Shown one piece after another: positions 721 through 36,000 of a stretch of DNA of 64,000 nt; positions within the stretch are counted from its first letter, which is position 1, and every line of letters starts with the position of its first letter. The notes beneath the pieces were generated by a model. That model worked only from the letters and a program-made list of their open reading frames with translations, ran no database searches and was not told the DNA's origin. The DNA comes from Convolutriloba macropyga (taxonomy: Eukaryota), in contig NC_134481.1 of NCBI RefSeq assembly GCF_964194025.1, forward strand, positions 46,252,001-46,316,000, read 5' to 3'. The position numbers and the translations under genes were made by a program.

Positions 721-950
721 TTAAGATATGTTTTGTGGAATTGAAAAGGTAAAATTGACCAAATAGCCTTTTTATTTGCTAGGGGATCTGGGTCGTTATG
801 TTTTTGGAGAACTTATCTGCAAATATAAAATATTGAATAGTTGATAAATCTAAGAGCGTATCCTCATACGTACCAAAAACAATCATGAACAATCTTTCGA
901 TTTAATGAAGAACAATTTCAATGTTTCAGTTATATTATGAGAAGCTAGTT

Positions 951-1421
951 ATGAGCTCTATGAACAATTGGAGGTATAAACTTCTTCTGTACAGAAGTCG
1001 ATTATCCGTATTTTTTGACAACAACTCCAACTGGTTACTTCCGTCATCTGCCTTGGTATTTGCTGGGTGGACTGCTTTCTTCTTTTTAAAATCCAAAGAG
1101 TTACGAAGGAAAAACAAAACGGAACGATCAAACTCAGCTAATTCTAAGTTTGAAGATTTCTTGTCTGGGATGAGTGATACCAAAAGCGTGCCTAAAGATG
1201 CAATCAAGTTTTCTCCCATGTCGGAGGAGGATAAGAAAATTGCGATTTCAGGACAGGTTATGAAAAGAAAATTAAGTGATGAAGAAATAGCGGCATCGTC
1301 TGCGGGTAAAAGCAAATCTGCGTATAAGAGTAGAACTCGATCAATTGATAGTGATTCTGTATTAGATGTTCAGAATAATAATTATGTGTTTGATTACCTT
1401 ATAAACTTGTTCAAAAAATAA
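951..1421 (+). CDS. Uncharacterised ~156-aa single-pass membrane protein
   Basis: Open frame of ~470 nt in AT-rich DNA; acceptor gtttcag ending 929 precedes ATG 951; hydrophobic segment WLLPSSALVFAGWTAFFFL followed by basic KSKELRRK; AATAAA overlaps the stop (1417-1422). Family not recognised. Confidence 0.6.
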   Translation: MSSMNNWRYKLLLYRSRLSVFFDNNSNWLLPSSALVFAGWTAFFFLKSKELRRKNKTERSNSANSKFEDFLSGMSDTKSVPKDAIKFSPMSEEDKKIAISGQVMKRKLSDEEIAASSAGKSKSAYKSRTRSIDSDSVLDVQNNNYVFDYLINLFKK

Positions 1422-1895
1422 AGATTTAATGAAATTTTCTCTGTCCAGAATACTTCGATTCAACTGATCCAAGAAATGATCAAAGAAATGATTTTGTCAA
1501 TGACAATTTTATTGACTTTCTGATTATTTTACTTCGGGTGTTCATTTGAAAGAGTTATTTTCCCGATTGGAATGGCGTTCATGAGACGGTTCTCCATTAT
1601 AACTTTGCGCAAATCACTCTTGCTGGAATATTTTAAACTTTTCCTTTTTTTTGTTTTGAATGAATGATTGAATTCAGCCAGAAGTTACGAACAACTTGAG
1701 TTATTTTTACAGAACCGAATTTTCCAATTAGGACGCCTGAAAAATCACTAAGTCTCATGAAAGGGGCGACCTTTTAATACGCGTTTGAAGGTACATCGGC
1801 GTTGATTAGCACCTCATTTGCATGGACAGATCAGTCGTTCATTAAATTAAAACTTTCCGATTTTAGATTAGTTACGGTTTTCTAAACGTGCAACA

Positions 1896-2102
1896 ATGGT
1901 CAATGCTTCTGCAGTTTCCAAAATGATGCCTGGTGCAAAAACAGCCCGCATGATGAAAATATGGGGCAAAAGGGGAATGGTCTGGGGAGGGGTCGGGGTT
2001 GTAGCTTTCATCTGGATTTGTGACATCAAAATGATCCAACAAAATATCCCATTCTACGGCAGGAAGTACGGCGAAGAACACGGAACGTGGAAACAGTTTT
2101 AG
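1896..2102 (+). CDS. UQCR11: Cytochrome b-c1 complex 6.4 kDa subunit (UQCR11/QCR10 family)
   Basis: 68 aa; W-x5-WGGVGVVAFIWICDIKMIQQNIPFYGRKY matches the recalled family pattern W..TWGAVGAVGLVWATDWRLILDWVPYINGKF; acceptor ttttag ends at 1866. Confidence 0.8.
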   Translation: MVNASAVSKMMPGAKTARMMKIWGKRGMVWGGVGVVAFIWICDIKMIQQNIPFYGRKYGEEHGTWKQF

Positions 2103-2557
2103 ACTTCAATTTGTGACTCGTAACCTCCTTAATGACGTCATAGGAAATTGAAAGATGTAACAGATTTCATCACTGCTATTCGACTCTGAAATTCGACTTT
2201 GAATGCCACTGATGTCAAGGAATTAATGAATAACAGACAGAGAACTTATATTATAGCGACTGGTGTTATGTAATTTTAATGCATTCTTTTACAATTTAGG
2301 ATATATAACCCGATCATTTTAAGATGTCTTTAGAAATGATTTTCTATGAGAGTCCTGGAATTACAGTGGGGGGGGGGAGTGGTGAGGGTCTGCTTGCTTG
2401 GGGAGGGCGTCTGCTTGCCAAAAATAGAATGGAGCCCACCGGTTCTATCAATTTTATTGGCTGTGGCTGGCAGATTAATTATTAATACAGGCTTTTTGCA
2501 ACCCTTCTGTGTGATCAGTTAATAGTACTGTGCTAACCTTGAGGTCACATTTTTCAG

Positions 2558-2694
2558 ATGTAAATAATGACCTGATTTGGAACACGCGGTTGGTGTTGAC
2601 GAAACTGCGCTACTTCAATAGGCTGACAAGCTGCTCCAACAAAAGACACATGCGAATATCTTCCACAATTTCGTGAACAAGTATCCGGATCGAG
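2558..2694 (+). other. Putative non-coding 5' exon, probably of PHKA
   Basis: Bounded by tttttcag| (ends 2557) and gag|gtaaat (2695); higher GC than flanks; no open frame through it; the next clear coding acceptor is 7405, directly before the PHKA ATG. Confidence 0.4.
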
Positions 2695-7405: not shown

Positions 7406-10400
7406 ATGCGGAGTCGCAGCAACTCGGGTGCAATGTTGGACGTGTACCACCACCAACTCACCAAAGTCCTCTTGGAGTTGCAGCACCCTCTCACTGGCCT
7501 GGTGTCGCCCAGGGATACAGAGTCTGGGTATTTCAACCATGCTTGGATAAGAGATAACGTATATTGTTGTCTGTCAGCGTGGGGACTGAGTCTGGCCTAT
7601 AGGAAGTGCACAACAGACCGAGATAGCGAATCCAGAGTCAAGTTAGTTCACGCGTTTTTGAATGTCTTCGGTTTGATTTTATTAGTTTACGTGGAAGTTT
7701 AAAGGTGATATAGCACTTAGCTATGGTATCAATTATGTTAGAGCCTGTCGTGAAACCCAGTAGTCGGTTGGAGAAAATTGAGTAACTATTGAAAGGGCTT
7801 TATTAAATCATAGCTTAGCTACCGAATCAAAGCTACCGTTGTTACTATCACGTGTGTTTTTCACTTTTTGTCATTATGAATTTTGTGGGAGTTTTAAAGG
7901 CACGATGTTATTTGTAACATAGCCTTAAAGTGGATTTTGAAGAGCTTTCAAAAATATTTTACAGAATGTTAAATTTGAATTAAATTAATTTGATTCTGAG
8001 AGCAGTTTGAGTATTTGAATTGTGAACTGTCAATAGGTAAACAGTTAATAAAAACATCAGCTGCGATTTGCTCTCCACCTCTTTACATTTCAAAGTTAGC
8101 ATTTCTACATTGCTTCGAAGCAAAGTTGAGAAGGTTGGGACGCCTTTTTCAAAATTGATGTGAAGTACTAAGATTTTTCCTCTTCATTTCTATAGCTGAG
8201 AAGCGGTAGCTGAGTGAGGTTAAATGCATTTGTTTTGACGCTTGTGTTTCTTTCTATTACGCCTAGTTCTCGTTTTGCATTTTTCACTCGCGAAAACGAA
8301 CCAATTTTATTTATGCCATTTTTCTCCATTTGCTCTGTCGGCATAATTTGGTAACATCGATCTTCATACAAAAGCACGTGGGAGTACTTTTTCACCATTT
8401 TGTTGCTCCATCGCACTTTAAATGACCGTATTGTAACTTGACTTCCATTCCAGTCAATTTTTCAATTATAGGGAAGGTATCTCAATACAGCCGTAAAGAC
8501 TATTTTTTGATAATCTAATGGCTAGGCTTTTGTTGGCACTTTTTATGCTTCTTACCTAAAAGTCAAAAAATATTGGCTAGCAAATATTTTATTAGCTGAA
8601 GACGTTTTTTAATCATACACCGTCCTAATACAATTTTATGAATTTTGTAACCGGTAACTCTCACCCCGTGGCTTATAAGGGATAAGTAGCCACAAAAGTG
8701 CAGAGTTTGAACATTTTATGCCTCAAATTTTTACTAGCTATAATGATTTCAAATTTGGTGGTTTTCCAGTTGCTTAAACCTTTTGCATTTAGTACAAGTT
8801 GTGCCCTAACTTAACGGCAATAATATGTTGGTTTTTGGGTAAAATTTACTAATAGTTGTGATTTATTCAAGTTCTTCTGCACGTTTTGAAAGATTTTTTT
8901 GTTGCTTGGAACTTTGCTAGTTTTTAATTAAATTTTCTAAGGTACACTAATTCGGTACTTCGGCGTTGTGTGAGGATTTTATGGTCATATGTTGCAATGA
9001 TCATTGATTTTAGGAAGTCAGCTGGCAAGCACTCTTGATTACTCGTGAGTTGCAAGATAATTACTTCTAAATTTGCTATTTGAAAAAAATGACCGTAGGT
9101 CGACTTTTTATTTTATTTTTGCCTAGATAACATACTATTCCCGCATTCTTTCAGAACATAATGTTCTCCTGTGGTAATTTTACCAATGCTGGCTTTTCTG
9201 ATCTGATCTCTATGAGACTTTGAAGTCATTTTCTCGGTGAAGTACATTTCAATAGTTGTACGTACTGAAACAAAGAAAAAAATTGAATGCGCCTAATACA
9301 TTGGGAGTTCTGCCATTCCATGTGCCATTTTAACAGAGTACTGTGCAAGTTCAGGAGTTTTTATTATCAGAAAAAAATTTTGTTCGGCCCGCATTAAAGA
9401 TGTTCCGAAAACTTTTTCAAAGATCTTTGGGCGGCGTAGATCACGTTGTATTTCAACCCCCATTTTCTTAACCTTGTGGTCAACTATGCTTTTTGTAATG
9501 CTTTTACAACTTTCCTCAACGTAAACGGTTCGTGACAGAGGAAAGAATGTTTCCTGCATGCTTTCAGCATAAATCCTTAGCCTTTTTGTTTTATTAAGTT
9601 TTGATGTTTTTGAATAGTTCGTTTTTTTCGATGTAATTGTATTAGGACCATTGCCTTATCCCAGCTGGGGTTTACAACGAAAAAGCCTATTTTTGTGAAA
9701 TTCTTTTTAAAGAGTGCGGATGGTTGAGGCTTCGAAAGCTTTTTTGGTACAGCCTTTTTTTGTTTATTAATAGCTGCAAAGCAATGGGCAGAGCTTTTAT
9801 TGGCCTCCACTTGTTTTTTTTCTCGTCAAGTTTTGTCACAACCATACGATGTCATGATCATTTCAATTCTTTTTTGGTTCGTTTATTCATGCAATTTCGA
9901 TTGAATAGCATGTGTGGACGTTATTTGTCATTTTTTACTAATAGTGGAGCGAATTTTTTCTAATTTGCGTAATTAAGCTTTCGAGGTGAAAATAAATTCT
10001 TGAGGTGAAAACAGTGATTCGAGTCCAATGAAACGTCTTCAATGTTAATTTTTGGAGATATAAATTATTTGGCTGTAGTAGAATTTTGTAACATGTCGTC
10101 ATTCTTAATTCTCAATGGTCTATTTTGCTCGATCACTTAACAGAGTTCATCGTATTGGTTTTTCCGCCTCAATTTTCTAAATTTCCGAATACATAAATTT
10201 TCCTTGTGAAACAACTCTTGTTGCGAAACAACAATTACATAACTTTGGTGAAATAACTTGTTAGCACCTAATGCATACTTCGAAAATTTAAAACTTGTGA
10301 AACTCGGCTCTGCTATTATACTATTTTTCTGCCAGTCTTTTCTGGCGTCTGTTGCTATTCCAAAGTAGTCTAATCAGTTAAAAAGTGGGGCAAGGTACCC

Positions 10401-13400
10401 GACTAATCGCTAGGAGAGTTGATTGAACACACTACCACATGGTTGTTATGGCCCTCTAGAAGTCATTCAACAATTTGGCTTTGGCTTGGAGCGTTATAAC
10501 CTCTCGATATCGTGTGTTTATTTTCATAATGTGTTTCTATCTGCAATACCTCACGGTAATAATCAAACGCTGCTGCTTAAAAACGTTGTCCAAATGGTAA
10601 TCTGCCCTCGTCATGTTGTAATTTGTTCTTTTTTGCAATCATGCCCGGAGTTTGATGATAATTTGATTATTCTTTGTTTCAGTTATCTGGAGAAAAGTGT
10701 AATCAAACTGATGAGGGGACTGATGACGTGTATGATGATGCAGTCAGAGAAGATCGAAGCTTTCAAAAAGTAAATAACAACCCCCCCCCGCCCCCCACCT
10801 CACTCGTATCATTCACGTCCGCATCGGTACAATTATATACATACATTCACACGCATACCACAGCCGTACACTTCAGAGCAATTGGCATGATGGAAAATTG
10901 GTCATGAGATTGTATTTATAGTAGCATTACACATGGTTTACGGGTTTTACGATTATATCAATTCCCATTGTTCAAGTAAAAGGCAGTAATCATAGTATGA
11001 CATGTAATGTGAGACTAAATAATTACTCGTTTGTGATTTCAGAAGCCAAAATAAGTACGACTCAATCCACGCGAAATTTGACGCCTCCAACTTCAGAACA
11101 GTAGTCGGTGACTATGAATGGGGGCACTTACAAATGGACGCAGTTGCCTTCTATGTGCTTTTGCTGGCTCAAATGACAGTTTCTGGGCTTGAAATTATCT
11201 ACACCCACGATGAAGTTGCATTCATCCAGAATTTGGTGTTCTATCTAGAAAACGCTTACAAAACGCCCGACTTTGGAATTTGGGAAAGAGGTGACAAGAC
11301 GAATCGAGGTCATGTTGAACTGAACGCGAGTTCTGTAGGAATGGCAAAAGCTGCCCTGGAAGCTATCCAATCGGTGGATCTTTTTGGTGCGAGAGGGTCT
11401 TCACAATCTGTTATAACGTGCATGCCTGATGAAGTAACGCAATGCAATATTGTACTTCATTCGTTGCTACCGAGAGAATCAAACTCGAAAGAATGTGATC
11501 TATCTTTACTTTGTTTGATAACCTACCCAGCTTTCGCAGTTGACGATGCAGCTTTAAGAGATCAAGTCCGAAATTCAGTTTGTGAAAAGTTAGAAGGTCA
11601 TTACGGATGCAAACGGTTTTTACGAGACGGGTTCAAAACTGTAATTGAAGACCCGGACAGGCTATATTACGAATCGCACGAGTTGAAACTCTTCGAAAAT
11701 ATTGAATGCGAATGGCCGATTGGGTTTTGTTTCCTCTTATTAGACGCCCTCTATAAAGACGATAAAGATTTGGTCGAAAAATACCGAAAGAAGTTAGACA
11801 CCTTGATGGTTCCGTGTCCTGAACTTGGGTTCCACGTAATGCCTGAACTGTACTTTGTGCCCTATGATAATATAAACCAGGAGAAAAAGAACCCAAAAAC
11901 CCAAGACCGTCTTCCCGGTGGCAAAATTCCCCATTTATGGGGTCACTGTTTATGGATTGTGACGTCTCTGATCTGCGATGGGCTTTTGACCATTGGAGAG
12001 ATTGATCCTTTAAATCGAAGGCTGGCGACTCAAGAACGTTTGGATGTTATTGTTCAAATAGCTCCGGTTGCCGAAAACGATGACGTCAAATTGGCATTGG
12101 AGAATGAGAATATTCAAGTTGAAACGGCTGAAGAACTCGCCAACTCGGAGATGAAACTTCGTTTGTTCCATTCGCACGTTTTGAGCACATTGTTGACAAA
12201 ATTGGGCGAATGCCCTAAAATGGGGCTGACTGGGCGTTTTCCTCATGACATCATAGGATACGAGGGAACGAGTAAGTTCTATGTTGTGAAGGAAAACCTC
12301 GTTGCTTTTGTTCCGTTCTTTTTGAACAAACAAAAATTCTATCTTGCCTTGGATCATTCCTTAATTCTAACTCAGTTGAAATTAATGGTTCAATATTTCA
12401 AACTAAACTGGCGCAGTTTGGGCAGACCAACTGTGATTTTATTAATTACCAAAGAGTTCTTGGATCCGAATACGGGAAAGTTATCCCAGTTGTACCTGGA
12501 CACATTGCATAAGTTGAGATCTGGGTTACTAGATGGTTTACGAGTCGGTTTCGGAAGCGTGTCTACATTCTACGCAACATCAAGTATCAGGCGATTAGGA
12601 TTCTTGGAACGAATCATTGACGAAGACGCTTCTAATCCACTTGACCACCATCAGAGCATCAGCAGTCAAGGTCATATCACACCTTTGCTCTTCAGAATGG
12701 GATCCTTTAAAGCGCCCACAGATTTATCAAGAAGAATATCAGTTTTCAGATCTCTCTGCACAAATCGAGACATGGCTATTGGAAGTCCAGGAGAATTTGC
12801 AGAAGACTCAAATCGGTTGCCTAAGAACTCGACCGTAACTTCTTTTCTCAGAATAATGTCAACAGATTCGATGCCGGACGAAGAGTCTTCGAGTGTGAAG
12901 AAGTCAGCAATTGACTCGGCCAGTGAAAGTGACCTCGTGAAGTTACTACATAGCACTTCATCATTGAGTGAACAACTCGACGTTCTGGTTTTTATGTACA
13001 ATAAATATGGCAGTAATCATAAAGTTAAGATTGGTGAGCAAACACCGACAGTTCGTATGCTGTTGAAGGAACTGTACAGGAAAAGCTCAGAAGTTCTGGC
13101 GTGGAGCGTTTTGAGGTACAGTGCCAGTTTGCTACAAAAGACGCTGGATAATATTACGTCATCAATTCTGCAGATTCTCATCAGACGTAAAGCGGTGACA
13201 ATCGGAATGCCTCCGGAACCTCGCGAGAAGACCATTATCAAACCAGTTACGCTTGAGGTCTTTAATGATATGTTGTACGATGCGTGCGGCAGTAGCAGTC
13301 CTTTGGCAGCTTTGACTCAAGAAATCATCAAGTTCACTGCCCTGCTCGTTGAGACCCAACTTGACCTGTTCGCAGGTATGATGCGAATCAGGATGGGTCT

Positions 13401-16400
13401 GATTATCCAAGTATTGACTCAGGAAATTGCAAGATCTTTGAACGTCGACCTGGACACAGGTATGGACCACTTGCTCAAACTGGAACCCTACTGTATTTAC
13501 GAGTTGGTTTGCAACCTATTCTCTGGTCACGAGATCAAACTCACATTTAGTAATAAAAAACCGGCAGAGGGACAATCGGAGCTAACGCTGGTTCGCTTCA
13601 GCAAGAAAGATATGAGTCGCATTAAGCTTTCAGTCAAACATGAATTGGAGGACGATGATTCCGATGACAGTAACAACGATGACAACAGTGGATACAGTCG
13701 AGGCACTTGGTTGCGAAGGCGCAGAATTGACGGATCCTTGACTAGAGTGCCCTGTGGGTTCTATCAGTCTGTTTGGCGGTTACTTGATAAATGTGAAGAA
13801 GGCATTTACGTTGAAAATAACATGCTATACGCTGGATGGTTAGTCGTTATTTCGCTAGTATAAACGCAACAATAATTATAGGTACTATTATTGTCTGATC
13901 AATTGCCCTCGGATGACGTCTGACGCAATTATTGTAGTCGTGCGTGTCTTCTTCTTTATGCTAAATTTTGCTTGATCCTTTATGACATCGTTTGAATTGG
14001 CATAAACTCAATTGCAAAGGCTGCTCAGCTTGAACATTTGAAGCAGCTGAAGAACTGAAATTTGGTATGCACGAAACTATGTGTTCTGAATTGGAACATC
14101 ATTTGTGCCTCTTTGCTTTTGTGCCTCTTTGATTTTGTGCCTCTTTTCATTAACTTTAAAATCGAAAACAATCGTCGTCTTAACCTACTATAGATGTTTC
14201 TTGACTCAAGGTAATTCCGTTGTTTTTATCAGCCTCGTTTTTGCAATTATAGATGCAGCTACGATGCTTTGTATGATGCAGCTACAATTTAGTATAATTC
14301 ATTGCTCTTTAACAAAGTTTGAAGCAATTAATGAAACGTGTTTTTTTGGCAAAATTTTTTGCTTGACCGTTTTCTTTTAGAACCTTCTTTCACTTCTTGA
14401 GTGACTTCATCAAGCTTGAATTTAAAAAAAAAATTTTTGAGTGATTTGAATTGCGAGCATCCAGAAAATACGTCTCTTCCCAAAGCCGGTTGTGAACGCT
14501 CAACGTACATAGCCTATAGAGCGTCGAGGTTAATGTCGACAACTGCATCCGAAAGGTCGCTTGCTCCAAACCCTCCGCGTCCAAGTTTTCGCAATATAAT
14601 CGTTTCTCTAGCCTATATCCCCCTCTAAATTGTTTGCCTCGTCTGAGGGTTAGAGGTCTGCGCTTCCCTTACAATTCAATCTTAATTTTGAGGTTTTCCT
14701 TAAGAATAATAACGTACTCTTGTAAACATAGGCTGATACATTCCAAATCCAGAAGTTTCAATTTCAGTGAAGTGTCATTTTGGTGAAAGAGTCACAGAGC
14801 TCGCATTTTTTGTGATCTCAATTTATTTGATTGTGCTTATCGTGTAAACGTCAGTTCCTTTTATCTCCGGGTTAAATATTTTAAATTGTGATTGGCCGAC
14901 ACTCACAGTCTTTCATATAGTCTGTCTGCCGTTCTGAATTAGATTTTTTAGTGGTGTTCTTTAGTTTCAGGGTTATTGTTGTTTGATTGCAGATTTTCTT
15001 ATTGACCTCTTAAAGCAGCCGAGCTAGCTTATCAGCAGTCTACTTCCAAAGTTCGTGCAATTTGGTGCCCTGTAAATTGTTAATTGCTCTCGAACGAATT
15101 TTGACGTAATCATTGTAAACGTCTTTGTTTTCATGCAAAATTTTTGCTCGACCGTTTTGTTCTGGACAATTCTTTCGATTTCACTTCTCGAGTGACCTTT
15201 TCACGCTTTTTGCTTGAATTTGTGTAACCTAATTTGCTTGTGTTCAGATTTCAGATCTTTTATTTTTTACCCTCCCCCAGCTTGGTGGGCATATATCTTT
15301 TACACCCCCGGCGCGCGTGCTGGTTTTATATAGTAACCTGCTATATAACAATACAATTTGTAATTGGGTGCATAAAAAACTCTGGGGGCCGAAACAGAAT
15401 TTATACCAGAAATTAAGTATGGTCCTAAGAGAAAAGCAATCGTAGGGTAAGCTGACACAAGGCTCTGATAGCCGAGTGATCAATGCGTAAGTTTATTAAG
15501 ACGGAGGTTGGGGGTTTCGAGACCCTCCGTGATCGGAATTTATTGCACCCATAAAAATTTTTCTAGGAATCAGCCTTCTTTCTATTAAATTGCCCCACCT
15601 GTCATTTGAGAGAAATTTGTCCGACGTTTGTTGGTTTATTAATAGCCGCCCTCATCTTCTCAGCCGGCTATTATAGCGCTCCTATTTTGTTTACTTCGTC
15701 GAATAAAAAAAATGTTTCGCTTTACCTCATTTTGCCGCTTTTTCAACATTTTGCGTGATATCTTTTTGACTTCTCTAGGCTAGTTTCTCTCTTCTCTCAT
15801 TCTGCTAAAAGTGATTTTGAACATCAGTTGCTCAGCAAAGCAATTCAAAATGAACAGAGTCAGTATAAAAAATTGAAGTCAGAAGTAGAAACGGGATAAA
15901 CCCATAAAGCCCAATTTTAGATGCCCGCTATTTGAACGTCGTTCCTATAAGTCTTAGTTACCATCTCTAATGCTTATTGGTATTGATAGTAGCCCCTGTA
16001 GCCTCTCTCTAAGAAACAGAAGTACGTTATGTTTAGCTACGAAATGCCATCAAAATAAATCGGACTTAAAAAATGTTTTTGTACAAAAATCTTGTTTTTT
16101 CAATATCTTCTATTCTTTCAATCCCAATCATGCTTATTGGAATCAACGGCGGCTGTTTTCCGGCAATCTGCCGGGTATGTTTTAGAAATTAGTACTAAGC
16201 TTATTGCTCTCCTATTTAATAGGTGATTTCACTATAGTTGTTTAAACTAACGACATTGAACGAAGGAATTAGAACATTTCTTGGCAGTTAGTAAAAAATA
16301 GACTGGGTTCATTTCTTCGTTTTAATTTTCTGTTTAAATTCCGGTGCTGGTCAGTGGGCTGAACAGCGGTTATTTTCCGGCAATTTGATGGCTATGTTCA

Positions 16401-22145: not shown

Positions 22146-23633
22146 ATGGGTTGCGACTTCGTCCATAATATTAATCAAATGAAATCAATTGAGTCATGTT
22201 TTGGAACAAGTAGTGAAGTTTCATTGTTCTCATTGCCTCTTGAAATTATCCAAATTATTTCCCAAAATTTGATAGATTCTGAAATTGCGTCCAGATTTTT
22301 TGGACGGGGTTTGAGTCATCTGCTAAATCTGAGAACAACGTGTGCTTATATGAACAATGTTGTATTAAATATCCCACTAAATCTAAAATTCCAACTATCA
22401 AGTTCCTCTATTCCAAGTCAAAGTTCGGGTCTGTATTCTCTTATCGAGTTCATGGCTTCGGAAACGATGTGGCGAGTAGCGACCTTAATTCTCAACGATT
22501 CCAGTCCGAACCTTAATAGTTCCAAACAGTTGATTGGGTTCCTGGGAAACTTCGGTCAAATTTTTGAGGCCTCCTTGAAAAGTGTGACATTGAATTACGC
22601 ACAAAGTGTCTGTTTTGCAGACGAACTTCTCAGTTTTCTCAACAAATTTGCATTTACAAACAGAACTGTTGTTACAATTCGTTATTCTCTGGGGACAACC
22701 GATTCTGAATCGTCAGATATTCAACCTTATCGCGACTATGTTCGAGATGTTATCATCGCCAGACGTGCACAGTCAAGTATCTGTATTCCTTCGTTGATTC
22801 AAACTTTTGCGAATGTTAGGGTTGTTACCTTGACCTGCCCTCTAATTTTATCATTAACAGTTCTCAGCTCTCTCAAATATCTACAATGCTTGACATTCAA
22901 AATATCTGTCATCATAGATGAAATATCATCTTATGGCGTGAGTTTAGAAAGTGTTCAAAAGTTGGAAATGGATTTACATGCTTTCAGGCGAAAGGATGTT
23001 CCCAATTTATCCATGGATTTTATACCAAAACATTTTCCAAATCTGAGATATTTCAGACTCTCGTCGTGTATTCCGACAACTTTCAACTTTGAAGTTGAAA
23101 ACTCGGTTGCCATTTGCCTACCCGATTCTTGCGAATCTTTGCACGTTCACTCGCAAAATGTTCTGAGCTATTTCGGAAAAGCTAAAATTAGAAATTTAAG
23201 TTTGCTCTCTGCCGATGTGGACAACGAACTGTTATCGACAAAGGATTGTTTAGTTTCTTTGAGTTGTTTGGTAATTGACACGGTATATTGCAACGATGTT
23301 TTCGAAGTCCTCGGTTTAATATTTGAGTTACTGAAGATCAGAGTACAATTGAAATGTATAGCTTTTGATGTCTCTGAATTTTCAGCTCGCAAGCAAAGAT
23401 TTATCTCAACTGATGATTTTGAACGAATTCGCGGCTGGTTCAATGAAAGAACGCTTTTCTTCGAAGCGCATGAGAATTTTCAGTATTTGTTAATTGGTAA
23501 ACTTCTTTTGACTTTCAAGACTAACACGGTATCTTCTAAAGAGTGGATGATTATGAAACATTTCGATGCCTTCCATGACTGGTCTAGAAAACTACTTCCG
23601 AAAAATGTGCAAATAATTGATGTCTCAGCGTAA
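22146..23633 (+). CDS. F-box protein with LRR-like C-terminal region (~495 aa; alternative ATG at 22179)
   Basis: SLFSLPLEIIQIISQNL...LLNLRTTC is an F-box-like motif; LRR-like segments LSSLKYLQCLTF, LESVQKLEM, FPNLRYFRLS; AATAAA at 23665-23670; intronless. Confidence 0.75.
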   Translation: MGCDFVHNINQMKSIESCFGTSSEVSLFSLPLEIIQIISQNLIDSEIASRFFGRGLSHLLNLRTTCAYMNNVVLNIPLNLKFQLSSSSIPSQSSGLYSLIEFMASETMWRVATLILNDSSPNLNSSKQLIGFLGNFGQIFEASLKSVTLNYAQSVCFADELLSFLNKFAFTNRTVVTIRYSLGTTDSESSDIQPYRDYVRDVIIARRAQSSICIPSLIQTFANVRVVTLTCPLILSLTVLSSLKYLQCLTFKISVIIDEISSYGVSLESVQKLEMDLHAFRRKDVPNLSMDFIPKHFPNLRYFRLSSCIPTTFNFEVENSVAICLPDSCESLHVHSQNVLSYFGKAKIRNLSLLSADVDNELLSTKDCLVSLSCLVIDTVYCNDVFEVLGLIFELLKIRVQLKCIAFDVSEFSARKQRFISTDDFERIRGWFNERTLFFEAHENFQYLLIGKLLLTFKTNTVSSKEWMIMKHFDAFHDWSRKLLPKNVQIIDVSA

Positions 23634-28060: not shown

Positions 28061-29461
28061 CTTATAAATTTCTCAATGCCATATTTAGTCCGTATTTCCA
28101 TCTAGAAGTGTGTCCTCTAATTTGTTTCTGTCTATTGAAAACAACCGCAGATTGACAGATAACTAATAAAAAATATTATGTACCCAAAAGCCTAAATAGT
28201 TACTTTTTAAATTCGTTGAAGATGAATTTTGTATCTTTGGTAATTATAGTTAAGAAAAGTCATCTACTTGATATGAAATAATTATACTGATAATGTGTGT
28301 ACTAATACGAAAATTGTATATATACCTGACCAACATTAGGAAACGTAATAAAGCCTAAAATTGCTCAACTTGGAGATCAGTTATTATTTACGAAGAACCA
28401 ATACAGCTCGAGGTATAACACTGCGGAATCGACAATCACCAGAACACCGGAGAACCAGCCTGATGGTCAGTTGAAAGCTTTGTCTTGAAACTCTCATAAT
28501 ATCTTGTAAAATTTATTCTTTCTTGAAATATTATTTTATAAAATAAAAGAATGATTTACCTTGAAAATCGTTGTCCAATTTCTAAGTTGTAATAGACATT
28601 AAGGGAGCTCATATATAGCAGTGAAAAGCTATCAAATTACACGGCAACTAGTGGATGTATCACGAATTCGAACCGCTCAAATAAAGGCTATTACTAGCTA
28701 ATTGAATTGAAATTATATCCGCTTAAATTGCACTATTAAATTGCACAATTATAATAAGTCCTTGTAAGATGGCGATATTTCTTATTAATTACTGTGAATT
28801 TTAACTCCAAAACACCCACAAAATAACCCTCAAAAGTTAGTGATCCAGGAGTCCGTAACCCGGTGCATACCGTGATCCAGGTGCATACCGTCTCAAGCAG
28901 TTACATTTACTTGTGCTGAAGCTAAAACAGTTTTTATCGTTTGAATTAGAAACACATTCTGTGTGAAAATTCTGACAATCCGTTTTGTATGTGAATGTAG
29001 TTGATGATTACGTTTTAGAAAATAATTACAAAGTTGGTGCATGTTTTGTCAAACTTTGTGCAACGCTTGCGGAGAGTTTTAGTTCCTAGTCCTGCAGAGC
29101 AGTCGAGTGGGGCCTATTTTCTGAAGTGGGTTACTATTTCAAGAGCAGGTTTTAAAAAACGAATCCTACAGTGAACAAAGTTGCCGTTTTGATAATTTTC
29201 CACGAAGATGACAGGTTTTCTCAAAAATGGCAGCATTTTTAAGCCGGCATTGATGAACGAAATGTCGCTTGGAGGCTATATATTATATTGAATGGCCTGT
29301 AAATTATCATGGCCACTCTCAAGCCACTTTTAAATTATACCAGCGAGGGTTAATGTTTTCATCAGCAGAGAAACAGCCCAATGAACCATTAGATTATGTT
29401 TTCAGGTTTTGATGAAAAATAATGAACTTGTTATTGAATTGAGTGGAATCTTAATCTATCC

Positions 29462-31973
29462 ATGATGCTTATCAATTTGCAAGATAGACTTAAAAAGAAC
29501 TGGTTTCTTGTCAGCATTGTAGTTGTCATCTTGTTAGCCAGATACGAACCATGGATTGGAGCCAAAGACGGACCTTTGATGCCAGAGATCACTGTCAAAT
29601 ATCTAGCAGTGTTCATTATTTTCTTCAACAGTGGACTCTCAATCAAAACTGAAGAATTTTCAAGAGCATTTTATCAACTCGAAACCCATGCATTCATTCA
29701 GTTGTTCACTCTGTGTTTTATACCACTATTTGTGAAATTCTTGATTCCATTTTTGACAAAGCTTGGGATTTTGGAGCAACTTTTGACGGGGTTTCAGGTC
29801 GTAGCGTGTATGCCACCTCCGGTGTCTTCGGCAGTGATTTTGACCAAAGCGGCCGAAGGGAACGAAGCGGTGGCGATTTTCAACTCGGCTTTCGGAAGTT
29901 TTCTTGGAATTTTTGTCACGCCGATGTTGCTTTTACAGCTTGTCGGTAAGTTTTCAATGCGATTAAATTTTATTAACAGCATAAAAATTGTCATTTTCGG
30001 TAACATTGTGGATGCTTAAACGTTTTGAAAGATTTGATCGCAACTGATTCTTTTATTTTGTCATCTTTGACTCCAAACTAAATTTATCAGTAACAGTTTC
30101 AACTTAACACCTGGTTAATATCAAAATGTAAATTAATGAAATCTTGGTTCACAGCCCATCATTGTTACTATTATCCATTCGGCCCGAAGTGGCTTAAATT
30201 GCTGGATTCAATTTTCTAAAAAAATTGCTCCTCATTTTCCTTAAATTATAACCTTAACTTCAAACTCGTGTCTTGTTTCAGCAATGTAAGTTTCGATCTA
30301 TCGATTATAATGTTCTATTTGTTAATGTTGTTATTTATATGCTTTGCTTCATTTTGAGACTGTTGTTCTGGTCCAATTTAAGTTGGGGGAGGGACTGAGA
30401 ATTTTATTTTCTAGATGGCAATTTACTTTGTCATGAAACTCATGGTCGATGGTCATAATACGGTCATTTGACGGAATTTCAGTCAGATGTGGATGATTGA
30501 TATATGCTATGGTAACAGAAAGCTTCATACAGTATAATTTTTTTCTCTTTAAGTATGATCAGTGCCTAGTAAGCATGATTTTTGCTCGTTTTTTTGTTGA
30601 ATTTTAAGTGATCTCGTTCGCATTGTCTCTCAAGCAGAAACGATGACTAAACCGCTTGGCGCTTTTACTGTTTGCCAAGTTTTACCGTGCGCGATATCGG
30701 ATGTTCATGGACAACTATACAAGAAGAGCTCAACCTAAGATCAAGTCATGCATAGTGCGGGTTCTTTTGAAATTTTGTTCACTAACTTTTTCGGCTTTTT
30801 TCGTACATTATCGAGATTTTTCTATTTTTTTGCTACAAAACTGTGTTTTATATTACCTTTGTGTATGCATATAAACACGACCTAAAATAATAGTTTTTAG
30901 CCAGAAAAAGTCAAAACTCGCCATAATTGTCACAAAATTGAAAAAGTTAGTAAACGTTGTCATAAAAGCACCGAAAACCACAATAACGCAGTAGGTTTGC
31001 GCAAAGCATTTTACGATGAAATTTTCTGGAAGTACAGTTAGACGAATGCGCAAACAATGTGGAGTTTCTTCAAGAAATGCGGCAAAAATCCAAATTGAAG
31101 AATAAAGCGTTTTCGATTGAAATGGTGCTTTAATATGCTCGAAAAGCTTTTCTAATTTTGGTAGAGTTGTTTTCAGTGATGAGAAGAGTCGTCTCCAGCG
31201 ATGAAATCGCTCATCACCAATTTTCAACTTAAAAACCCACATGGACCTTCCTAATCTTTATATAGATCGTTGTTAGACTTCAGGTTTAAATCACTAACAG
31301 ATAAAATCTCTGCTTTAAAGTAATGAAGGTGGCGCTTACTATGAAAATTTCATGTAGTTTCGAAGGTTAATTTAATGTTTTTTTTACAGGAACGTCTAGC
31401 TCTGTGCCTCTTAGCAAAATTTTCAACCAGCTGTTCTTGACTGTTGTGCTTCCAATTATTCTGGGTAATTCAATCAGAAGAAACTTCAGAGAGGTTCTGG
31501 ACAAACAGAAAATACCCTACAGCCTGATCGGGAACTTAGTTCTACTTTTAATAATCTTCACTACTTTCTGTGACACATTCAGCAGTTCAAACTTCGAAAT
31601 GGACAGAATAAGTTTAGCCCAAATCGCTTTCATTGTTTTGTCATTTCAGCTGTTTGTTTTGAGTTTATCCTTTTATCTAAGCACACATCCAAATTTGGGC
31701 AAGAGGTTGGGCTTCCAAGCTGCAGATACGGTGGCAATTATTTTCTGTTCAACGCACAAATCCCTCACGTTAGGAATTCCGATGTTGAAGATTATCTTTA
31801 GCCAGGATCCGAACTTGCCTTTATATTCGATTCCATTGCTGGTCTATCATCCTACGCAGATACTACTGGGAGGGGCTTTGGTTCCGACTGTCAAGAAATG
31901 GATGGTGAGAGAGCAGAGGAAGAATGGCGGAAGTCATGACTCGGAACCAGTTTCTGAGTTGCCGGATGTGTAA
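29462..31973 (+). CDS. SLC10A7: Sodium/bile acid cotransporter 7; join(29462..29945,31390..31973), 355 aa
   Basis: GPLMPEITVKYLAV..IFFNSGLS, CMPPPVSSAVILTKAA.GNEA.AIFNSAFGSFLGI, FCDTFS, FCSTHKSLTLGIPMLKI, PLLVYHPTQILLG; phase-1 intron g|gtaagt...tttacag|ga. Confidence 0.96.
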
Positions 31974-33037
31974 ATGAGGGAGGGTGAAAATGTACTAAAT
32001 TTAGTGCTATGAGAATTGTTTCCTTATTTTTCTCCAAAAAATGAACACCCAGTATTGTCCGCTGCAAATTTTACCTAAATTGAAAATGTTTTATATTGCT
32101 CCGCACTCAATCCTTGGAGAATGAATGCTTACCCCTGTCAATTTTTGAGAAAATTTTACTTAAACTTGATTTAGAGTATTTGCGTATGGGTAATATTTGA
32201 TAAAAAGCATGCAGCAATCGTCTTGTGACTTATTTGAAAAATTTCGCTGCCTCTAGTACGAATCACCTTTTTGCTCGTAATAAATAATTTCACAGGCATG
32301 TCATAAATGTTGCATGCCTTGACAATATTTGACACTTTTTCAAACATTTTGATTGTATTTGACATTTTCGCGCGTATTTTACGACTTTTAATTTTGTGAC
32401 AGCTTTTTCCTGTTGGTATATAATAAGTTGAAGAACAACAAGGAAGCAGTTTTATCATATAAATAGTCATCAGAGTAATTGAGGGCTTGTTTGGTTGTAA
32501 AAAAACATATCACTGATGCCGGTGTGGTAATGTGTATACACGTGTCGATTTACATGGAGCGGTTTGTTCTCGTATTTCGTATTGAAGTGTGTATACTTTA
32601 TTTATATTTTCTGAATTGTAAAATTGTCTATTTGGTCAACTTAATTGTACAGAATTAATTTATTGGTATGACACGTGTTCTTAACCTCCGTCGAGTTAAT
32701 GACCCCAGACCAAATAAATTCATCAAAACTTCTAGTTTCGTTAATTCTTTTTTTTGAGTACACGTAAGTGGAAGTCTATTTCTTTTGAATAGTAATTTTA
32801 ACACAACAACCGAAAGTAGCTTGCCATTTAACAAGGGCGGGATCAGTAATTGCTCGACGAGAAAGTTTATAAATGTCTATAAATGGTCACATTTTAACGG
32901 CACGTGATATTAAAAGGGCTCATTCAGATGAACGCACATCTGAATCTGAAATGAAATTTTTCAGGTTATTTTGTCACTTTTAATAGTCGGCTGGCATATT
33001 CGCAATATTCTTTGCTAACCGTGTTATCACAACAACT

Positions 33038-36000
33038 ATGGGCCGAGGCATTCAACAGAAATCTCTCAAGAGGACGAAGCGTGAACGAGTGAAAAACCGA
33101 TTGGCTAAACTGGAAGCTGTACAGAAAGCCAAAGATGACGGTACCTACATTCCGAAACCCTGGGAAAACAGACCTCTGATCCAGGAGTTATACTCGTTTG
33201 CAATCAAGAGTCACAAGACACAGAAGGCTGCAGATGCGGAACACCAGAATGGCGATGGACAGAGCACGGCTGGAAGTGACGGTGATTCTATCATGGATCT
33301 CGGTAAGAACTTTGTAAGTGGGGGTGGTAGAGTCGGGGGGGGGGGGTGGTTTCGAACTAAATTTGAAACAGTTATTGTAGTCGTATGCAAATTTGACGGT
33401 TCTATCGACTGATACGCCCTTGAGTTCTTGAATTCTACATAAAGTCGAAGCAAAAATTGGCCGAAATTGGTTTTACTTTTTCACTAACCATATTACTCCC
33501 GGTCTTTTAACTTCTGATAAAATTTTTAAATCAAACTGTAAATTTCACTTATATAATCAAAAGAGAAACACCTTACTGTCACGTACATGCGAATCACATC
33601 ACAAGGTATCATTTGAAAGTTTAAATAGCAAGGGTTATTCATATTTGGTTGTTCGTGTTTTCAACGTAAAATTTGGGCATAGATGATCTCGATTTTTTGC
33701 TCAATTGAATATTCTGCTGTTTTCTTAAAAATTTGGTTAAACTTTGTTTATTAACAGCTGCGTTTGCGTTAGCTGAGTGGAGCTATTATTGGCCTTCTGT
33801 TGTTCTTTACAATTCAAAGTGCTGTCTCTCCACTCATTTTTAATAGCCGCACAGCGATAGCTGGGGCTATTATTGGCCTTCTCTTGGTTTTTTACAATTC
33901 AAAGAATTTGAAAATTGAATTGTATTGGGGCGCTGTGTTTTTTTTAAGATGTGTTCACACATTTTTCAATGACTTTGATCTTTCAAAACGGGATAAACAG
34001 TTAAAGCCCAGCGGGCATTAAGTTTCATTAGAGGCCCAAAGTGAGCTTCAGTAGCCCTTCAAGTGCTTAGAGTGGCGCAGCTGCTGAAATGGCCTTAATT
34101 AAAGGTTAAAAGGTCATTTTTAGGTGTTTTTGGGCTCCAAAATGTTGCAATTTTTCATTTTTTTTGTAATTTTTTTAAATTTTTTTTGTTTTAGTCTTAC
34201 TTTGAAGTTTTTGAAAAAGGATGAAGGCCTTTTGTGAGCCAAAATAACTTGTTATGATCTTTTAATGAGCTATATGTTTTGGTACTACAAATACAAACAT
34301 GCAAAATGATACTAATTTTTAAATTTTTTGTTTCAAGTTTTTTGAACATTTTTGTCATTTTTGAGTTTTTCAGCTTCAGGGGCCAGGAATTTTCCTTTGT
34401 GGTTTGAGACTAGAGCACTGCATGGTTTCTAGTAATAACGAATTGGTTTTCAACATTTTAATGTCTCGAAATTTGGCATTTTTCATATAAAATTTGCAAT
34501 TTTTTCAAGGTTTCCTAAAGTTTTTGTTAATTTTTGATATTTGTCCATTTTAAAGTGCCAGAAAACCTATTCCACTGTCTGATTAAAAGTTACTGAATGG
34601 TTGTTGGCTTCAATAGATTTGTTATCAACAATTTAGCTTTTCGATTTTTAGAAGTTTTTTGATAAAATTTTCTATTTTTTTTCAAGTTTTTTCAAAACGT
34701 TTGTTTTATATTCAGTTTTTCTTGCCTCAGTAGCTAACCTCATCCAGGGTTTGATTATAGGTTATTAGATAGCTGCTAGAGGGCAATTGAACGATTTTCA
34801 ACATTTTAATATATAGAGTTTCTATTTTTTGAAATTTGAGATTTTTTCTAAAAAGTATTGCCTATCGATGTTTGAGCCAATGGAATTTTTAATGCTTGGA
34901 ATTGGGTCAATGGATAGCCTCTGGAGACACAGAAATGATTCTGGAAATATTAATAGCACATTTGTCAGTAAAATTTTAATAAATTTTGCAATCGATTTCA
35001 TTTTTTATATTTTTAGGTCATTTTTGAGTTAATCGATCTTCAAGGGCCAATGAATTTTTTCAGGTCATGCAGATATAATACTGGACCGATTTCAAAAACA
35101 AAAAATGGCCTTGAACATATTTTTGAAACATGTATTTTTAAAGGGATGAAATTTTGCCAAAGGGAAAAAAGCTTCAGGAGTTTTAGTAATGAGTATGTTT
35201 TTGTTTGATTGTTTTAGTTTCTCAATTTTTTGCGATGATTTTGTTTGTGTTTTGGCTGTCTTTTTTCCAATTGATCTGCTGGTCAGTCAGAGTACTTTAG
35301 TTTTTCATTCAATTCTTTGTATTATTTTTTTAGGACTTGTCCTGCTATGTTTTTTTTTTCGTCGTCATGATTTTTGTTACGACCTTATGACGTCACAGCC
35401 ACTTTTTGTTCATTCGTTCATGCAATTTCAACTGAATTGCATGTGTGACGTCATTTTTCGCTCTTAGTGGAGCGAGTTTTTTTTGTTCATGCGCGTGATT
35501 AAATTTTTGGTCACACTTGACTTACCTCACTCTCAAAAATGTCTTCCTCAATTTGAAATTGACTTTTATTTACTTAAATTCAAAGAGATAAGGTCAAATG
35601 GGTGTGTGTCACTCTAAATGAAGGTTATTCGAGATCAGCTAATAGAGGTAGCAATAACTTATACAGATTTTTAATCAAAATATAACATCAGCCTTCAATG
35701 AAAAGACGAATTTTTTTGGTCTGTGTTTTTTACTGTTTTTTTTAGACTGCCGGTCTACGAATCTATTGCGGCTATTTTCTGGCAATCTGCCAGCTATGTT
35801 CATGATTTTTGATGTCAAATTGAAGCGATTATTTTGGTCACGCCGAAACAGGAAGTGGAGCGAAAAAGCGAGGGGTTTTGCGGCGTAATTTTTTTCACTC
35901 CAATTTCAAAATAGAGTGACTCTCCTTTGTAGTTTTTTGTTTACATGTGGCAATTTGATTTTCATTTTTTCTTTTTCAATTTTTTTATCTGATTTTTTTT

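What the first reader, a model, noticed from the sequence alone, without database searches (positions are those of the whole stretch)
921..33100. Candidate metazoan operon: seven unrelated co-oriented genes, short gaps and acceptors lacking evident donors (SL trans-splicing?)
Seen: every host gene is on +, and their functions are unrelated. Stop-to-next-acceptor gaps are similar and short: 1421->1866, 2102->2557 and 19777->20230 (each ~450 nt); 21737->ATG 22146 is ~410 nt. AATAAA lies 195 nt before the 20230 acceptor and ~250 nt before the 32964 acceptor. Six of seven genes have a TTTCAG/TTTTAG acceptor just before the first (or first coding) exon: 929, 1866, 2557/7405, 20230, 29405, 32964. 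This leaves little room for promoters. Known: this layout typifies SL trans-spliced operons in nematodes, tunicates and flatworms. Inference: ORF951-UQCR11-PHKA-ORF20409-Fbox and SLC10A7-LLPH-like are polycistronic. An operon with multi-kb TE-filled introns but tightly constrained intercistronic gaps would be unusual. Caveat: UQCR11 has a possible local donor at 1791, so some acceptors may belong to cis 5'UTR introns.
Basis: partly seen in the sequence, partly recalled or inferred. Interest (0 to 1): 0.8.

Follow-up and report, generated by a model that had tools for sequence, protein, structure and literature searches.

The report
Spliced-leader gene cluster, possible acoel operon
In the acoel worm Convolutriloba macropyga, three neighbouring same-strand genes demonstrably receive the animal's shared 31-base RNA leader at the predicted splice sites, and the first two or three look like a conserved operon, but a shared transcript for all seven genes is not shown.

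Summary

The genome is the acoel Convolutriloba macropyga: size and scaffold count match PMC13650328. Its relative Symsagittifera roscoffensis is known to trans-splice 30% of its genes to one spliced leader (SL), per PMC9911081.

- **SL RNA genes:** the same leader is encoded here in canonical SL RNA genes inside the 5S rDNA repeats.
- **Trans-splicing:** contigs from the project's poly(A)+ RNA run carry the SL tail joined at exon starts 930, 1867 and 2558. That is three of three acceptors tested. The 7405 acceptor is an ordinary cis acceptor, paired with the donor at 2695.
- **Bridging RNA:** one RNA contig runs unbroken from the ORF951 coding sequence across the whole 445-nt spacer into UQCR11. 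No RNA contig covers 2308-2555.
- **Conservation:** the order, strand and tight spacing of ORF951-UQCR11-PHKA are kept in S. roscoffensis. The other spacers are 3.7-7.1 kb there, and ORF20409 and the F-box gene are swapped.

SL trans-splicing is shown. An ORF951-UQCR11(-PHKA) operon is likely but unproven.

The scan noted similar clusters in other windows of this genome; their follow-ups had no RNA data.

The parts
928..929 (+). AG acceptor; SL trans-splice site of ORF951 (exon starts at 930)
   Evidence: The RNA contig of run X5 carries the loose 5' letters GTGATAAACTTATTAAAT ahead of position 928. This is the SL tail; its last AG coincides with the genomic AG.
951..1421 (+). ORF951 coding sequence (156 aa, one predicted membrane helix by eye, acoel-restricted)
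   Evidence: One search lists the ORF. The S. roscoffensis homologue is 37% identical and syntenic. A whole-library phmmer search found only 3 relatives. There is no Pfam hit.
1422..1866 (+). Spacer 1 (445 nt), single copy, fully covered by poly(A)+ RNA. It holds AATAAA at 1417 (overlapping the stop) and ATTAAA at 1841/1846, just before the acceptor
   Evidence: X5 contig record 29 runs 951-1893 without a break. The S. roscoffensis counterpart is 260 nt.
1865..1866 (+). AG acceptor; SL trans-splice site of UQCR11 (exon starts at 1867)
   Evidence: X5 loose end TTGTGATAAACTTATTAAA ahead of 1864.
1867..2307 (+). UQCR11 mRNA body (CDS 1896-2102, 68 aa). The RNA contig ends at 2307
   Evidence: Pfam PF08997, E=6.7e-9. 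X5 record 30 covers 1864-2307 at depth 437.
2308..2557 (+). Spacer 2 (250 nt from the end of the RNA contig, 455 nt from the stop). Single copy, with no RNA contig over it. The 9-mer ACCCTTCTG at 2501-2509 is conserved at the same offset in S. roscoffensis
   Evidence: The depth arithmetic leaves zero X5 depth over 2308-2555. The motif is not recurrent in the window.
2558..2694 (+). PHKA non-coding exon 1. It is SL trans-spliced at 2558 and cis-spliced from the donor at 2695 to exon 2 at 7406
   Evidence: X5 record 31 has the SL tail ahead of 2556. Its loose end behind 2694, ATGCGGAGTCGCAGC..., is the start of the ORF at 7406.
7406..19777 (+). PHKA coding exons (phosphorylase kinase alpha/beta regulatory subunit), including the 909-aa exon at 11134-13863
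   Evidence: Pfam PF00723 and PF19292. 72% identity to the S. roscoffensis PHKA-like protein.
20229..20230 (+). Candidate SL acceptor of ORF20409 (not tested with RNA)
   Evidence: TTTCAG 178 nt before the ATG. The S. roscoffensis homologue has an equivalent TTTCAG about 215 nt before its ATG.
20409..21737 (+). ORF20409 coding sequence (442 aa, S/Q/N-rich, no known family)
   Evidence: The S. roscoffensis homologue is 41% identical but sits next to SLC10A7 there. It is single copy here.
22031..22032 (+). Possible acceptor (TTTTAG) 114 nt before the F-box-like ATG (not tested with RNA)
22146..23633 (+). F-box-like gene (495 aa)
   Evidence: No Pfam hit. Atlas neighbours are F-box/LRR families. 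The S. roscoffensis homologue is 32-34% identical.
29404..29405 (+). Candidate SL acceptor of SLC10A7 (not tested with RNA)
   Evidence: TTTCAG 57 nt before the ATG. An equivalent acceptor exists in S. roscoffensis.
29462..31973 (+). SLC10A7 coding exons (29462-30019 and 31404-31973)
   Evidence: Pfam PF13593. 81-83% identity to S. roscoffensis.
32963..32964 (+). Candidate SL acceptor of the LLPH-like gene (not tested with RNA)
   Evidence: TTTCAG 74 nt before the ATG at 33038. An equivalent acceptor exists in S. roscoffensis.
33038..33298 (+). First coding exon of the small basic 'LLPH-like' protein
   Evidence: 76% identity over 62 aa to S. roscoffensis. The family name is not confirmed.

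Best explanation
This is a cluster of co-oriented genes in the acoel Convolutriloba macropyga whose mRNA 5' ends are made by spliced-leader (SL) trans-splicing.

**Shown.**
- A 31-nt leader (GCCTAATTGTTGTGATAAACTTATTAAATAG) is encoded by SL RNA genes inside the 5S rDNA repeats on chromosome 9.
- That leader is spliced onto the AG acceptors at 929 (ORF951), 1866 (UQCR11) and 2557 (PHKA exon 1).

**Inferred.**
- It is probably also spliced onto the acceptors at 20230, 29405 and 32964, and perhaps 22032.
- ORF951 and UQCR11, and less surely PHKA, are transcribed as one precursor from a promoter upstream of 929. 3'-end cleavage of the upstream cistron and SL addition to the downstream cistron then cut the precursor into separate mRNAs. 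That is a single-SL operon of the flatworm/tunicate type.
- The remaining genes (ORF20409, F-box-like, SLC10A7, LLPH-like) are most likely SL-accepting genes that sit close together here. They need not share a transcript.
For: **Species and system.**
- G000 has 1,175,981,408 bases in 4,694 scaffolds. This matches the C. macropyga assembly note, which also lists separate PacBio, Hi-C and poly(A)+ RNA-seq specimens. Those correspond to samples S1, S2 and S3 of runs X1-X5.
- The published S. roscoffensis SL occurs about 2,600 times here, against 0 for the control pattern.
- SL + GT copies lie in arrays interleaved with 5S genes on C9. They fold as a canonical SL RNA: the donor sits in stem-loop 1, followed by a U-rich single-stranded stretch and a second stem-loop (z = -6.0).

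**Trans-splicing.**
- X5 behaves as RNA: it has no depth over intron 1, and it joins exon 1 to exon 2.
- Its contigs carry the SL tail at 928, 1864 and 2556. That is 3 of 3 acceptors tested.

**Operon.**
- The genes are on the same strand, and the downstream genes are SL-accepting.
- The spacers are single copy and measure 445 nt and 250-455 nt. This meets the operational criterion used for Macrostomum lignano: under 1000 bp and a downstream gene that is SL trans-spliced.
- X5 contig record 29 (943 nt) is continuous from 951 to 1893. Every 31-mer from the ORF951 CDS through the unspliced acceptor into the UQCR11 exon therefore exists in poly(A)+ RNA. The equally unique stretches 801-927, 2308-2555 and 3200-6000 have no RNA contig, so genomic DNA contamination is unlikely.
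- ORF951-UQCR11-PHKA keep their order, strand and short spacers (260 and 436 nt) in S. roscoffensis at 37-74% protein identity. The distance from the upstream Hobbit gene to ORF951, by contrast, varies from 2.8 kb to about 9 kb.
Against: - A contig built from overlapping 31-mers does not prove a single molecule. An ORF951 3'UTR that overlaps a UQCR11 outron started inside the spacer would look the same.
- No RNA contig covers the UQCR11-PHKA spacer, 2308-2555.
- Spacers of 250-450 nt are longer than the roughly 100-nt mode reported for C. elegans and M. lignano. They leave room for compact promoters.
- A 9-mer, ACCCTTCTG, lies 55 nt upstream of the PHKA acceptor at the same offset in both species. 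It could be a promoter or start element.
- Contig depths differ (35, 437 and 110), although contig depth is a poor measure.
- In S. roscoffensis, PHKA to F-box is 7.1 kb, the ORF20409 homologue to SLC10A7 is 4.5 kb, and SLC10A7 to LLPH is 3.7 kb. ORF20409 and the F-box gene are swapped there. So the tightness of those pairs is not conserved.
- Four of the candidate acceptors have no RNA test.
Confidence: 0.6

Rival explanations
1. Each gene has its own compact promoter in the spacer, or in the 3' end of the upstream gene. Each is transcribed as a monocistronic pre-mRNA with a short outron, which SL trans-splicing removes. The tight head-to-tail layout is gene clustering, not an operon.
For: - Most SL-accepting genes in other phyla are not in operons. 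In M. lignano, 30% of genes are trans-spliced but only 15% are in operons.
- There is no RNA contig across 2308-2555.
- A conserved 9-mer lies 55 nt upstream of the PHKA acceptor in two species.
- The spacers of 250-450 nt are long enough for a core promoter.
- Spacing of four of the six pairs is not conserved in S. roscoffensis.
Against: - Continuous poly(A)+ RNA coverage runs from the ORF951 CDS through the unspliced 1866 acceptor. The outrons of ORF951 and PHKA have none.
- The two short spacers persist at 37-74% protein identity, in two repeat-rich genomes of about 1.1 Gb (61% repeats in S. roscoffensis) where other distances at this locus changed by kilobases.
Confidence: 0.33
2. There are two long operons: ORF951-UQCR11-PHKA-ORF20409-Fbox and SLC10A7-LLPH-like. 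Each is transcribed from a single promoter and resolved by SL trans-splicing.
For: - All seven genes are on the + strand, and a TTTYAG ends within 200 nt upstream of every first coding ATG.
- 3 of 3 tested acceptors take the SL.
- Acceptors just upstream of the ORF20409, SLC10A7 and LLPH homologues are kept in S. roscoffensis.
- Divergence between the two haplotypes in the three spacers compared is as low as in CDS: 1.3% against 1.05%.
Against: - There is no RNA test for the acceptors at 20230, 22032, 29405 or 32964.
- In S. roscoffensis the corresponding spacers are 3.7-7.1 kb, and ORF20409 and the F-box gene are in the opposite order.
- A PHKA precursor of more than 17 kb followed by two more cistrons is a long unit.
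- The low haplotype divergence is not decisive. Repeat-poor intron stretches are also only 1.4-2.4% divergent.
Confidence: 0.15
3. The acceptors belong to ordinary cis-spliced 5'UTR introns. Each gene has an upstream non-coding exon, for example one ending at the donor at 1791 for UQCR11, and no trans-splicing occurs.
For: - A GT at 1791 (AAG|GTACAT) could serve as a donor.
- The 7405 acceptor is indeed a cis acceptor.
Against: - For 929, 1866 and 2557, the RNA contigs carry the non-genomic SL tail rather than upstream genomic exon sequence.
- No X5 joint into these acceptors is among those listed.
- This reading remains possible only for the four untested acceptors.
Confidence: 0.05

Closest known systems
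SL trans-splicing in the acoel Symsagittifera roscoffensis (Martinez et al. 2022, PMC9911081)
   Same: - The leader sequence is the same. Here it is 31 nt and ends ...AAATAG. The paper's 32-mer has one more A.
- Both have an SL RNA gene with a donor site and stem-loops.
- The orthologous genes at the S. roscoffensis locus have equivalent acceptors just upstream of their start codons.
   Different: - This is a different species, C. macropyga, whose genome note mentions neither SL nor annotation.
- The S. roscoffensis paper and its preprint never mention operons, polycistrons or intergenic distances.
Operons of the flatworm Macrostomum lignano (Ustyantsev & Berezikov 2021, PMC8629364)
   Same: - A single SL type is used on both first and downstream genes.
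- The operational definition is same strand, downstream gene SL trans-spliced and repeat-adjusted spacer under 1000 bp. ORF951-UQCR11-PHKA meets it.
- Both genomes are repeat-rich.
   Different: - The phylum differs: Platyhelminthes against Xenacoelomorpha.
- The modal spacer there is about 100 bp, against 250-455 nt here.
- That study is a genome-wide statistic. This is one locus.
Caenorhabditis elegans SL2-type operons (Blumenthal & Gleason 2003, as cited in PMC8629364; otherwise my own knowledge)
   Same: - A polycistronic precursor is resolved by 3'-end formation coupled to SL addition.
- The clustered genes are functionally unrelated housekeeping genes.
   Different: - No specialised downstream leader is seen. 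ORF951, UQCR11 and PHKA all carry the same SL tail.
- The spacers are 2-4 times longer.
- No Ur-like recurrent element was found.
Chaetognath (Paraspadella gotoi) operons (PMC12460157)
   Same: - SL RNA genes lie in ribosomal DNA clusters.
- Operons are called from short same-strand distances plus SL evidence.
   Different: - The criterion there is under 250 bp. Only the 2307-to-2558 distance (250 nt) is borderline.
- That species has three leaders, against one seen here.

Membership tests
SL trans-spliced gene | A common leader that is not encoded at the locus is joined to the mRNA exactly at an AG acceptor | tested here: met
   X5 poly(A)+ RNA contigs carry 18-19 nt of the SL tail ahead of 928, 1864 and 2556. 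The last 2-3 SL bases coincide with the genomic (T)AG.
SL trans-spliced gene | The genome encodes an SL RNA: leader exon, GT donor, Sm-like single-stranded site and flanking stem-loops | tested here: met
   SL + GT copies lie in arrays within the 5S rDNA repeats on C9. The gene reads ...AAATAG|GTAAAA and folds into two stem-loops around a U-rich stretch, with z=-6.0. Binding of Sm proteins was not tested.
SL trans-spliced gene | The acceptor has no cis donor partner in the mature RNA | tested here: inconclusive
   No X5 joint into 930, 1867 or 2558 is among the joints listed, but 19 joints were not shown, and contigs drop rare isoforms.
SL trans-spliced gene | The leader is also joined at 20231, 22033, 29406 and 32965 | not tested
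There is only sequence evidence, plus conservation of the acceptors in S. roscoffensis.
SL-resolved metazoan operon | Adjacent genes are on the same strand, separated by a short spacer free of repeats | tested here: met
   The spacers are 445, 455 (250 from the end of the RNA contig), 453, 409 and 991 nt. Those covered (both trio spacers, within 801-3400) are single copy, at DNA depth about 51; one search found one genomic match for 1700-2200.
SL-resolved metazoan operon | Downstream cistrons receive the SL | tested here: met
   Shown for UQCR11 and PHKA. Not tested for the other four genes.
SL-resolved metazoan operon | One polycistronic precursor spans the cistrons | tested here: inconclusive
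   An RNA contig is continuous over 951-1893, from ORF951 through spacer 1 and 27 nt into UQCR11. None covers 2308-2555. Contigs cannot prove single molecules.
SL-resolved metazoan operon | There is no promoter or transcription start inside the spacers | not testable with these tools
   This needs CAGE, ATAC or nascent RNA. The bacterial-type promoter scan says nothing about this.
SL-resolved metazoan operon | Linkage and tight spacing are conserved in relatives | tested here: met
   Met for ORF951-UQCR11-PHKA, with 260 and 436 nt in S. roscoffensis. Not met for the other pairs, which are 3.7-7.1 kb apart there, with a swapped gene order.
C. elegans-type (SL2) operon | A specialised second leader is used on downstream genes | tested here: not met
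   The same SL tail is on the first gene (ORF951) and on the downstream genes. Only the last 18-19 nt of the leader are visible.

The most novel reading that the evidence does not exclude
ORF951-UQCR11-PHKA is a genuine tricistronic operon, resolved by SL trans-splicing and conserved between Convolutriloba and Symsagittifera. That would be the first RNA-backed operon in Xenacoelomorpha. Together with the many similar clusters the scan noted in this genome, it would mean that operons are a genome-wide feature of acoels, despite their 1-Gb repeat-rich genomes.
Probability: 0.45. Interest if true: 0.65.

Novelty: new member of a known kind. Interest (0 to 1): 0.55.

Why it matters
SL trans-splicing and operons are scattered patchily across animal phyla, and their origins are debated. 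Acoels sit at a key position in bilaterian phylogeny.

SL trans-splicing has been reported for one acoel. No paper in the searchable library describes acoel operons.

This locus gives RNA-level proof that a second acoel uses the same leader. It also offers a concrete, conserved two- or three-gene candidate operon that existing public RNA-seq, or a simple RT-PCR, could confirm.

For annotators there is a practical consequence. Gene models in this still unannotated genome must be split at SL acceptors, or neighbouring genes will be fused.

Tried and rejected
- **Rfam SL1 search of the genome:** no hit, and the control genomes were silent too, so it says nothing.
- **Looking for mRNA contigs through the look-up of encoding contigs:** it returned only DNA contigs or nothing, so there is no extra RNA evidence.
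- **SL + 'AGA|GT' as the SL RNA gene:** the five hits are retro-copies. The true gene ends ...AAATAG|GT.
- **S. roscoffensis as the source genome:** rejected. Its PHKA is 72% identical, and this genome has no such copy. Assembly size and scaffold count match C. macropyga.
- **Recurrent spacer motif:** the conserved ACCCTTCTG occurs no more often than chance in the window.
- **Bacterial promoter/terminator scan:** no enrichment, and irrelevant to a eukaryote.
- **Haplotype divergence as a test of spacer constraint:**
  - Spacers are 1.3% divergent, CDS 1.05% and pooled introns 4.5% (Fisher p=1e-9).
  - Intron divergence is very uneven, from 0 to 11% per 500 nt, and repeat-poor stretches are at 1.4-2.4%.
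  - The result is therefore only suggestive.
- **A third acoel for synteny of the trio:**
  - The UQCR11 search found no candidates.
  - The only further ORF951 relative comes from a marine metatranscriptome with no genomic context.
- **Cis donor at 1791:** no support in the RNA contigs.

Full report
**What the genome is.** The window lies at C15:46,252,001-46,316,000 of a 1,175,981,408-base assembly in 4,694 scaffolds. These figures match the published genome note for the acoel Convolutriloba macropyga: 1,175.98 Mb, 4,694 scaffolds, 15 chromosomes (PMC13650328). The best named relative of the PHKA exon is a Symsagittifera protein at 72% identity. This genome holds no such 72% copy, so that protein is an orthologue in another species. 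They fit samples S1 (runs X1, X3), S2 (X2, X4) and S3 (X5).

**The observation.**
- Stops end at 1421, 2102, 19777, 21737 and 31973.
- AG acceptors end at 929, 1866, 2557, 7405, 20230, 29405 and 32964.
- Gaps are 445, 455, 453, 409 and 991 nt.
- AATAAA lies at 20030 and 32713.

UQCR11, PHKA and SLC10A7 are confirmed by Pfam. ORF951 and ORF20409 have no family but have syntenic homologues in S. roscoffensis. The 'F-box' and 'LLPH-like' names are not confirmed by Pfam; the first has F-box/LRR neighbours in the protein atlas.

A TTTYAG ends within 200 nt upstream of all seven first coding ATGs, including one at 22032 for the F-box-like gene. The chance is 0.27 per gene, or 0.002 for at least six of seven.

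**The leader and its gene.** SL trans-splicing is published for S. roscoffensis. There, 30.2% of genes take one leader, GCCTAATTGTTGTGATAAACTTATTAAATAGA (PMC9911081). That 32-mer occurs about 2,600 times in this genome with up to 3 mismatches, against none for the reversed control.

Every copy I read (17) is followed by mRNA-like or transposon-like sequence rather than a donor.

The true SL RNA genes end ...AAATAG|GTAAAA. They sit in arrays on C9 interleaved with 5S rRNA genes. The 94-nt gene folds with the donor in stem-loop 1, followed by a U-rich single-stranded stretch and a second stem-loop. Its free energy is -30.2 kcal/mol, z=-6.0. The leader is therefore 31 nt. The paper's extra A is probably the first base of many exons.

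**RNA evidence (window 1-6000).** X5 behaves as RNA.
- It has no depth from 3200 to 6000, inside PHKA intron 1.
- One of its contigs joins 2694 directly to ATGCGGAGTCGC..., which is the start of the exon at 7406.

So the 7405 acceptor is a cis acceptor paired with the donor at 2695.

X5 contigs carry loose 5' letters at three places:
- GTGATAAACTTATTAAAT ahead of 928;
- TTGTGATAAACTTATTAAA ahead of 1864;
- GTGATAAACTTATTAAAT ahead of 2556.

With the coinciding genomic (T)AG, each is the 3' part of the SL, joined to exon starts 930, 1867 and 2558. About 18 nt is what a 31-mer assembly graph can retain of a leader shared by thousands of mRNAs. All three acceptors that could be tested are thus SL trans-splice sites, and all three take the same leader. 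No cis splice from the suspected donor at 1791 is among the joints listed.

**Is it an operon?**

*For:*
- X5 contig record 29 (943 nt) is continuous from 951 to 1893. It covers the ORF951 CDS, the whole 445-nt spacer and the unspliced acceptor, and it reaches 27 nt into UQCR11. There it meets the SL-bearing path.
- The table depths are fully accounted for by the listed contigs. This leaves zero RNA contigs over 801-927, 2308-2555 and 3200-6000, so spacer 1 coverage is not background DNA.
- The trio meets the operational operon definition used for Macrostomum lignano: same strand, downstream gene SL trans-spliced, spacer under 1000 bp.
- In S. roscoffensis the same three genes lie in the same order and strand, with equivalent acceptors and spacers of 260 and 436 nt. 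The distance from the upstream Hobbit gene, by contrast, differs: 2.8 kb there against about 9 kb here.

*Against:*
- A contig cannot show one molecule. An ORF951 3'UTR running to the ATTAAA at 1841/1846 and overlapping a UQCR11 outron would give the same picture.
- There is no RNA contig across the UQCR11-PHKA spacer.
- The spacers are 2-4 times the usual 100 nt.
- A 9-mer lies 55 nt upstream of the PHKA acceptor at the same offset in both species. It is not recurrent elsewhere and could be a start element.

**The other genes.** The acceptors at 20230, 29405 and 32964 have counterparts just upstream of the orthologous start codons in S. roscoffensis. They are therefore probably functional and probably take the SL, but this is inference.

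The whole cluster is syntenic and on one strand in S. roscoffensis; one 52.6-kb contig carries ORF951 through SLC10A7. Three things differ there:
- PHKA to F-box is 7.1 kb.
- The ORF20409 homologue lies after the F-box gene, 4.5 kb before SLC10A7.
- SLC10A7 to LLPH is 3.7 kb.

A more distant ENA contig from another assembly (probably a third acoel; SLC10A7 60% identical) also has an ORF20409-like gene directly upstream of SLC10A7.

**Haplotype comparison.** A second contig of the same assembly project (L032) is about 95% identical to the window.
- Mismatch rates are 1.3% in three spacers, 1.05% in CDS and 4.5% in pooled introns.
- Intron divergence ranges from 0 to 11% per 500 nt, and repeat-poor stretches are at 1.4-2.4%.

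I treat spacer constraint as suggestive only.

**Comparison with what is known.** Mechanistically this is ordinary metazoan SL trans-splicing, already known in acoels. The candidate operon resembles the single-leader operons of flatworms and tunicates, not the SL2 system of C. elegans.

No paper in the searchable library mentions operons in acoels or Xenacoelomorpha. Other windows of this genome were flagged for the same pattern, but their follow-ups had no RNA.

**Verdict.**
- SL trans-splicing at 929, 1866 and 2557: shown.
- An ORF951-UQCR11 dicistron: likely, about 0.6.
- PHKA in the same unit: about even odds.
- The full seven-gene model: unlikely, about 0.15.

Noticed in passing
G000 genome-wide, e.g. 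L014-L030 position 1501: About 2,600 dispersed copies of the SL are followed by mRNA-like or transposon-like sequence, not by a GT donor. Several share the same downstream sequence (e.g. GATGAGCCAGCGAGGCATG). They look like retro-copied trans-spliced RNAs or retrotransposons that acquire the leader.
   Followed up: partly
L004:525-618 (G000:C9:23205578-23205671) and arrays at C9 23.1-23.8 Mb and 62-64 Mb: SL RNA genes are embedded in the 5S rDNA repeat (1,444 nt in the copy read), on the opposite strand to the 5S gene. The unit also holds an internal tandem repeat of about 188 nt.
   Followed up: partly
window 20409-23633 versus L037:27873-29781 and L054:3263-4525: ORF20409 and the F-box-like gene are in opposite order in C. 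macropyga and S. roscoffensis, while both stay on the same strand. ORF20409-SLC10A7 adjacency looks ancestral, because a more distant ENA contig from another assembly has it too.
   Followed up: partly
window 2558-2575 and 20231-20320: The SL-accepting 5'UTR exons begin with upstream ATGs right after the leader. PHKA exon 1 starts ATG TAA. The ORF20409 5'UTR starts with a 29-codon uORF. PHKA exon 1 of S. roscoffensis also has ATGATG a few bases after its acceptor.
   Followed up: no
window 2501-2509 and L037:9500-9508: The 9-mer ACCCTTCTG lies 55-56 nt upstream of the PHKA SL acceptor in both species, inside an otherwise unalignable spacer. It could be a start, branch or processing element.
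   Followed up: partly
window 1-800: A very high-copy repeat (DNA contig depth up to about 736,000, against about 51 for unique sequence) ends about 130 nt upstream of the ORF951 SL acceptor. The promoter of this unit is therefore either very close to the acceptor or inside or beyond a transposon.
   Followed up: no
window 7266-7391: A dispersed element of about 115 nt with many copies at 83-88% identity sits just upstream of the cis acceptor at 7405, in PHKA intron 1.
   Followed up: no
window 2172-22675 versus L032: A second haplotype contig differs by about 5% overall, and by up to 11% per 500 nt in parts of introns. This heterozygosity is very high; the cause was not examined.
   Followed up: partly
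window 48040-48113 (-): A tRNA-Cys(GCA) gene (Rfam 67.5 bits). A tRNA-like match also lies in a PHKA intron of S. roscoffensis (L037, about 20163-20309).
   Followed up: no
window 950-951: The X5 RNA graph has a second, unlisted path entering the ORF951 exon at 951, where contig record 29 starts. Its origin is unexplained; it could be an allele, an alternative 5' end or an artefact.
   Followed up: no
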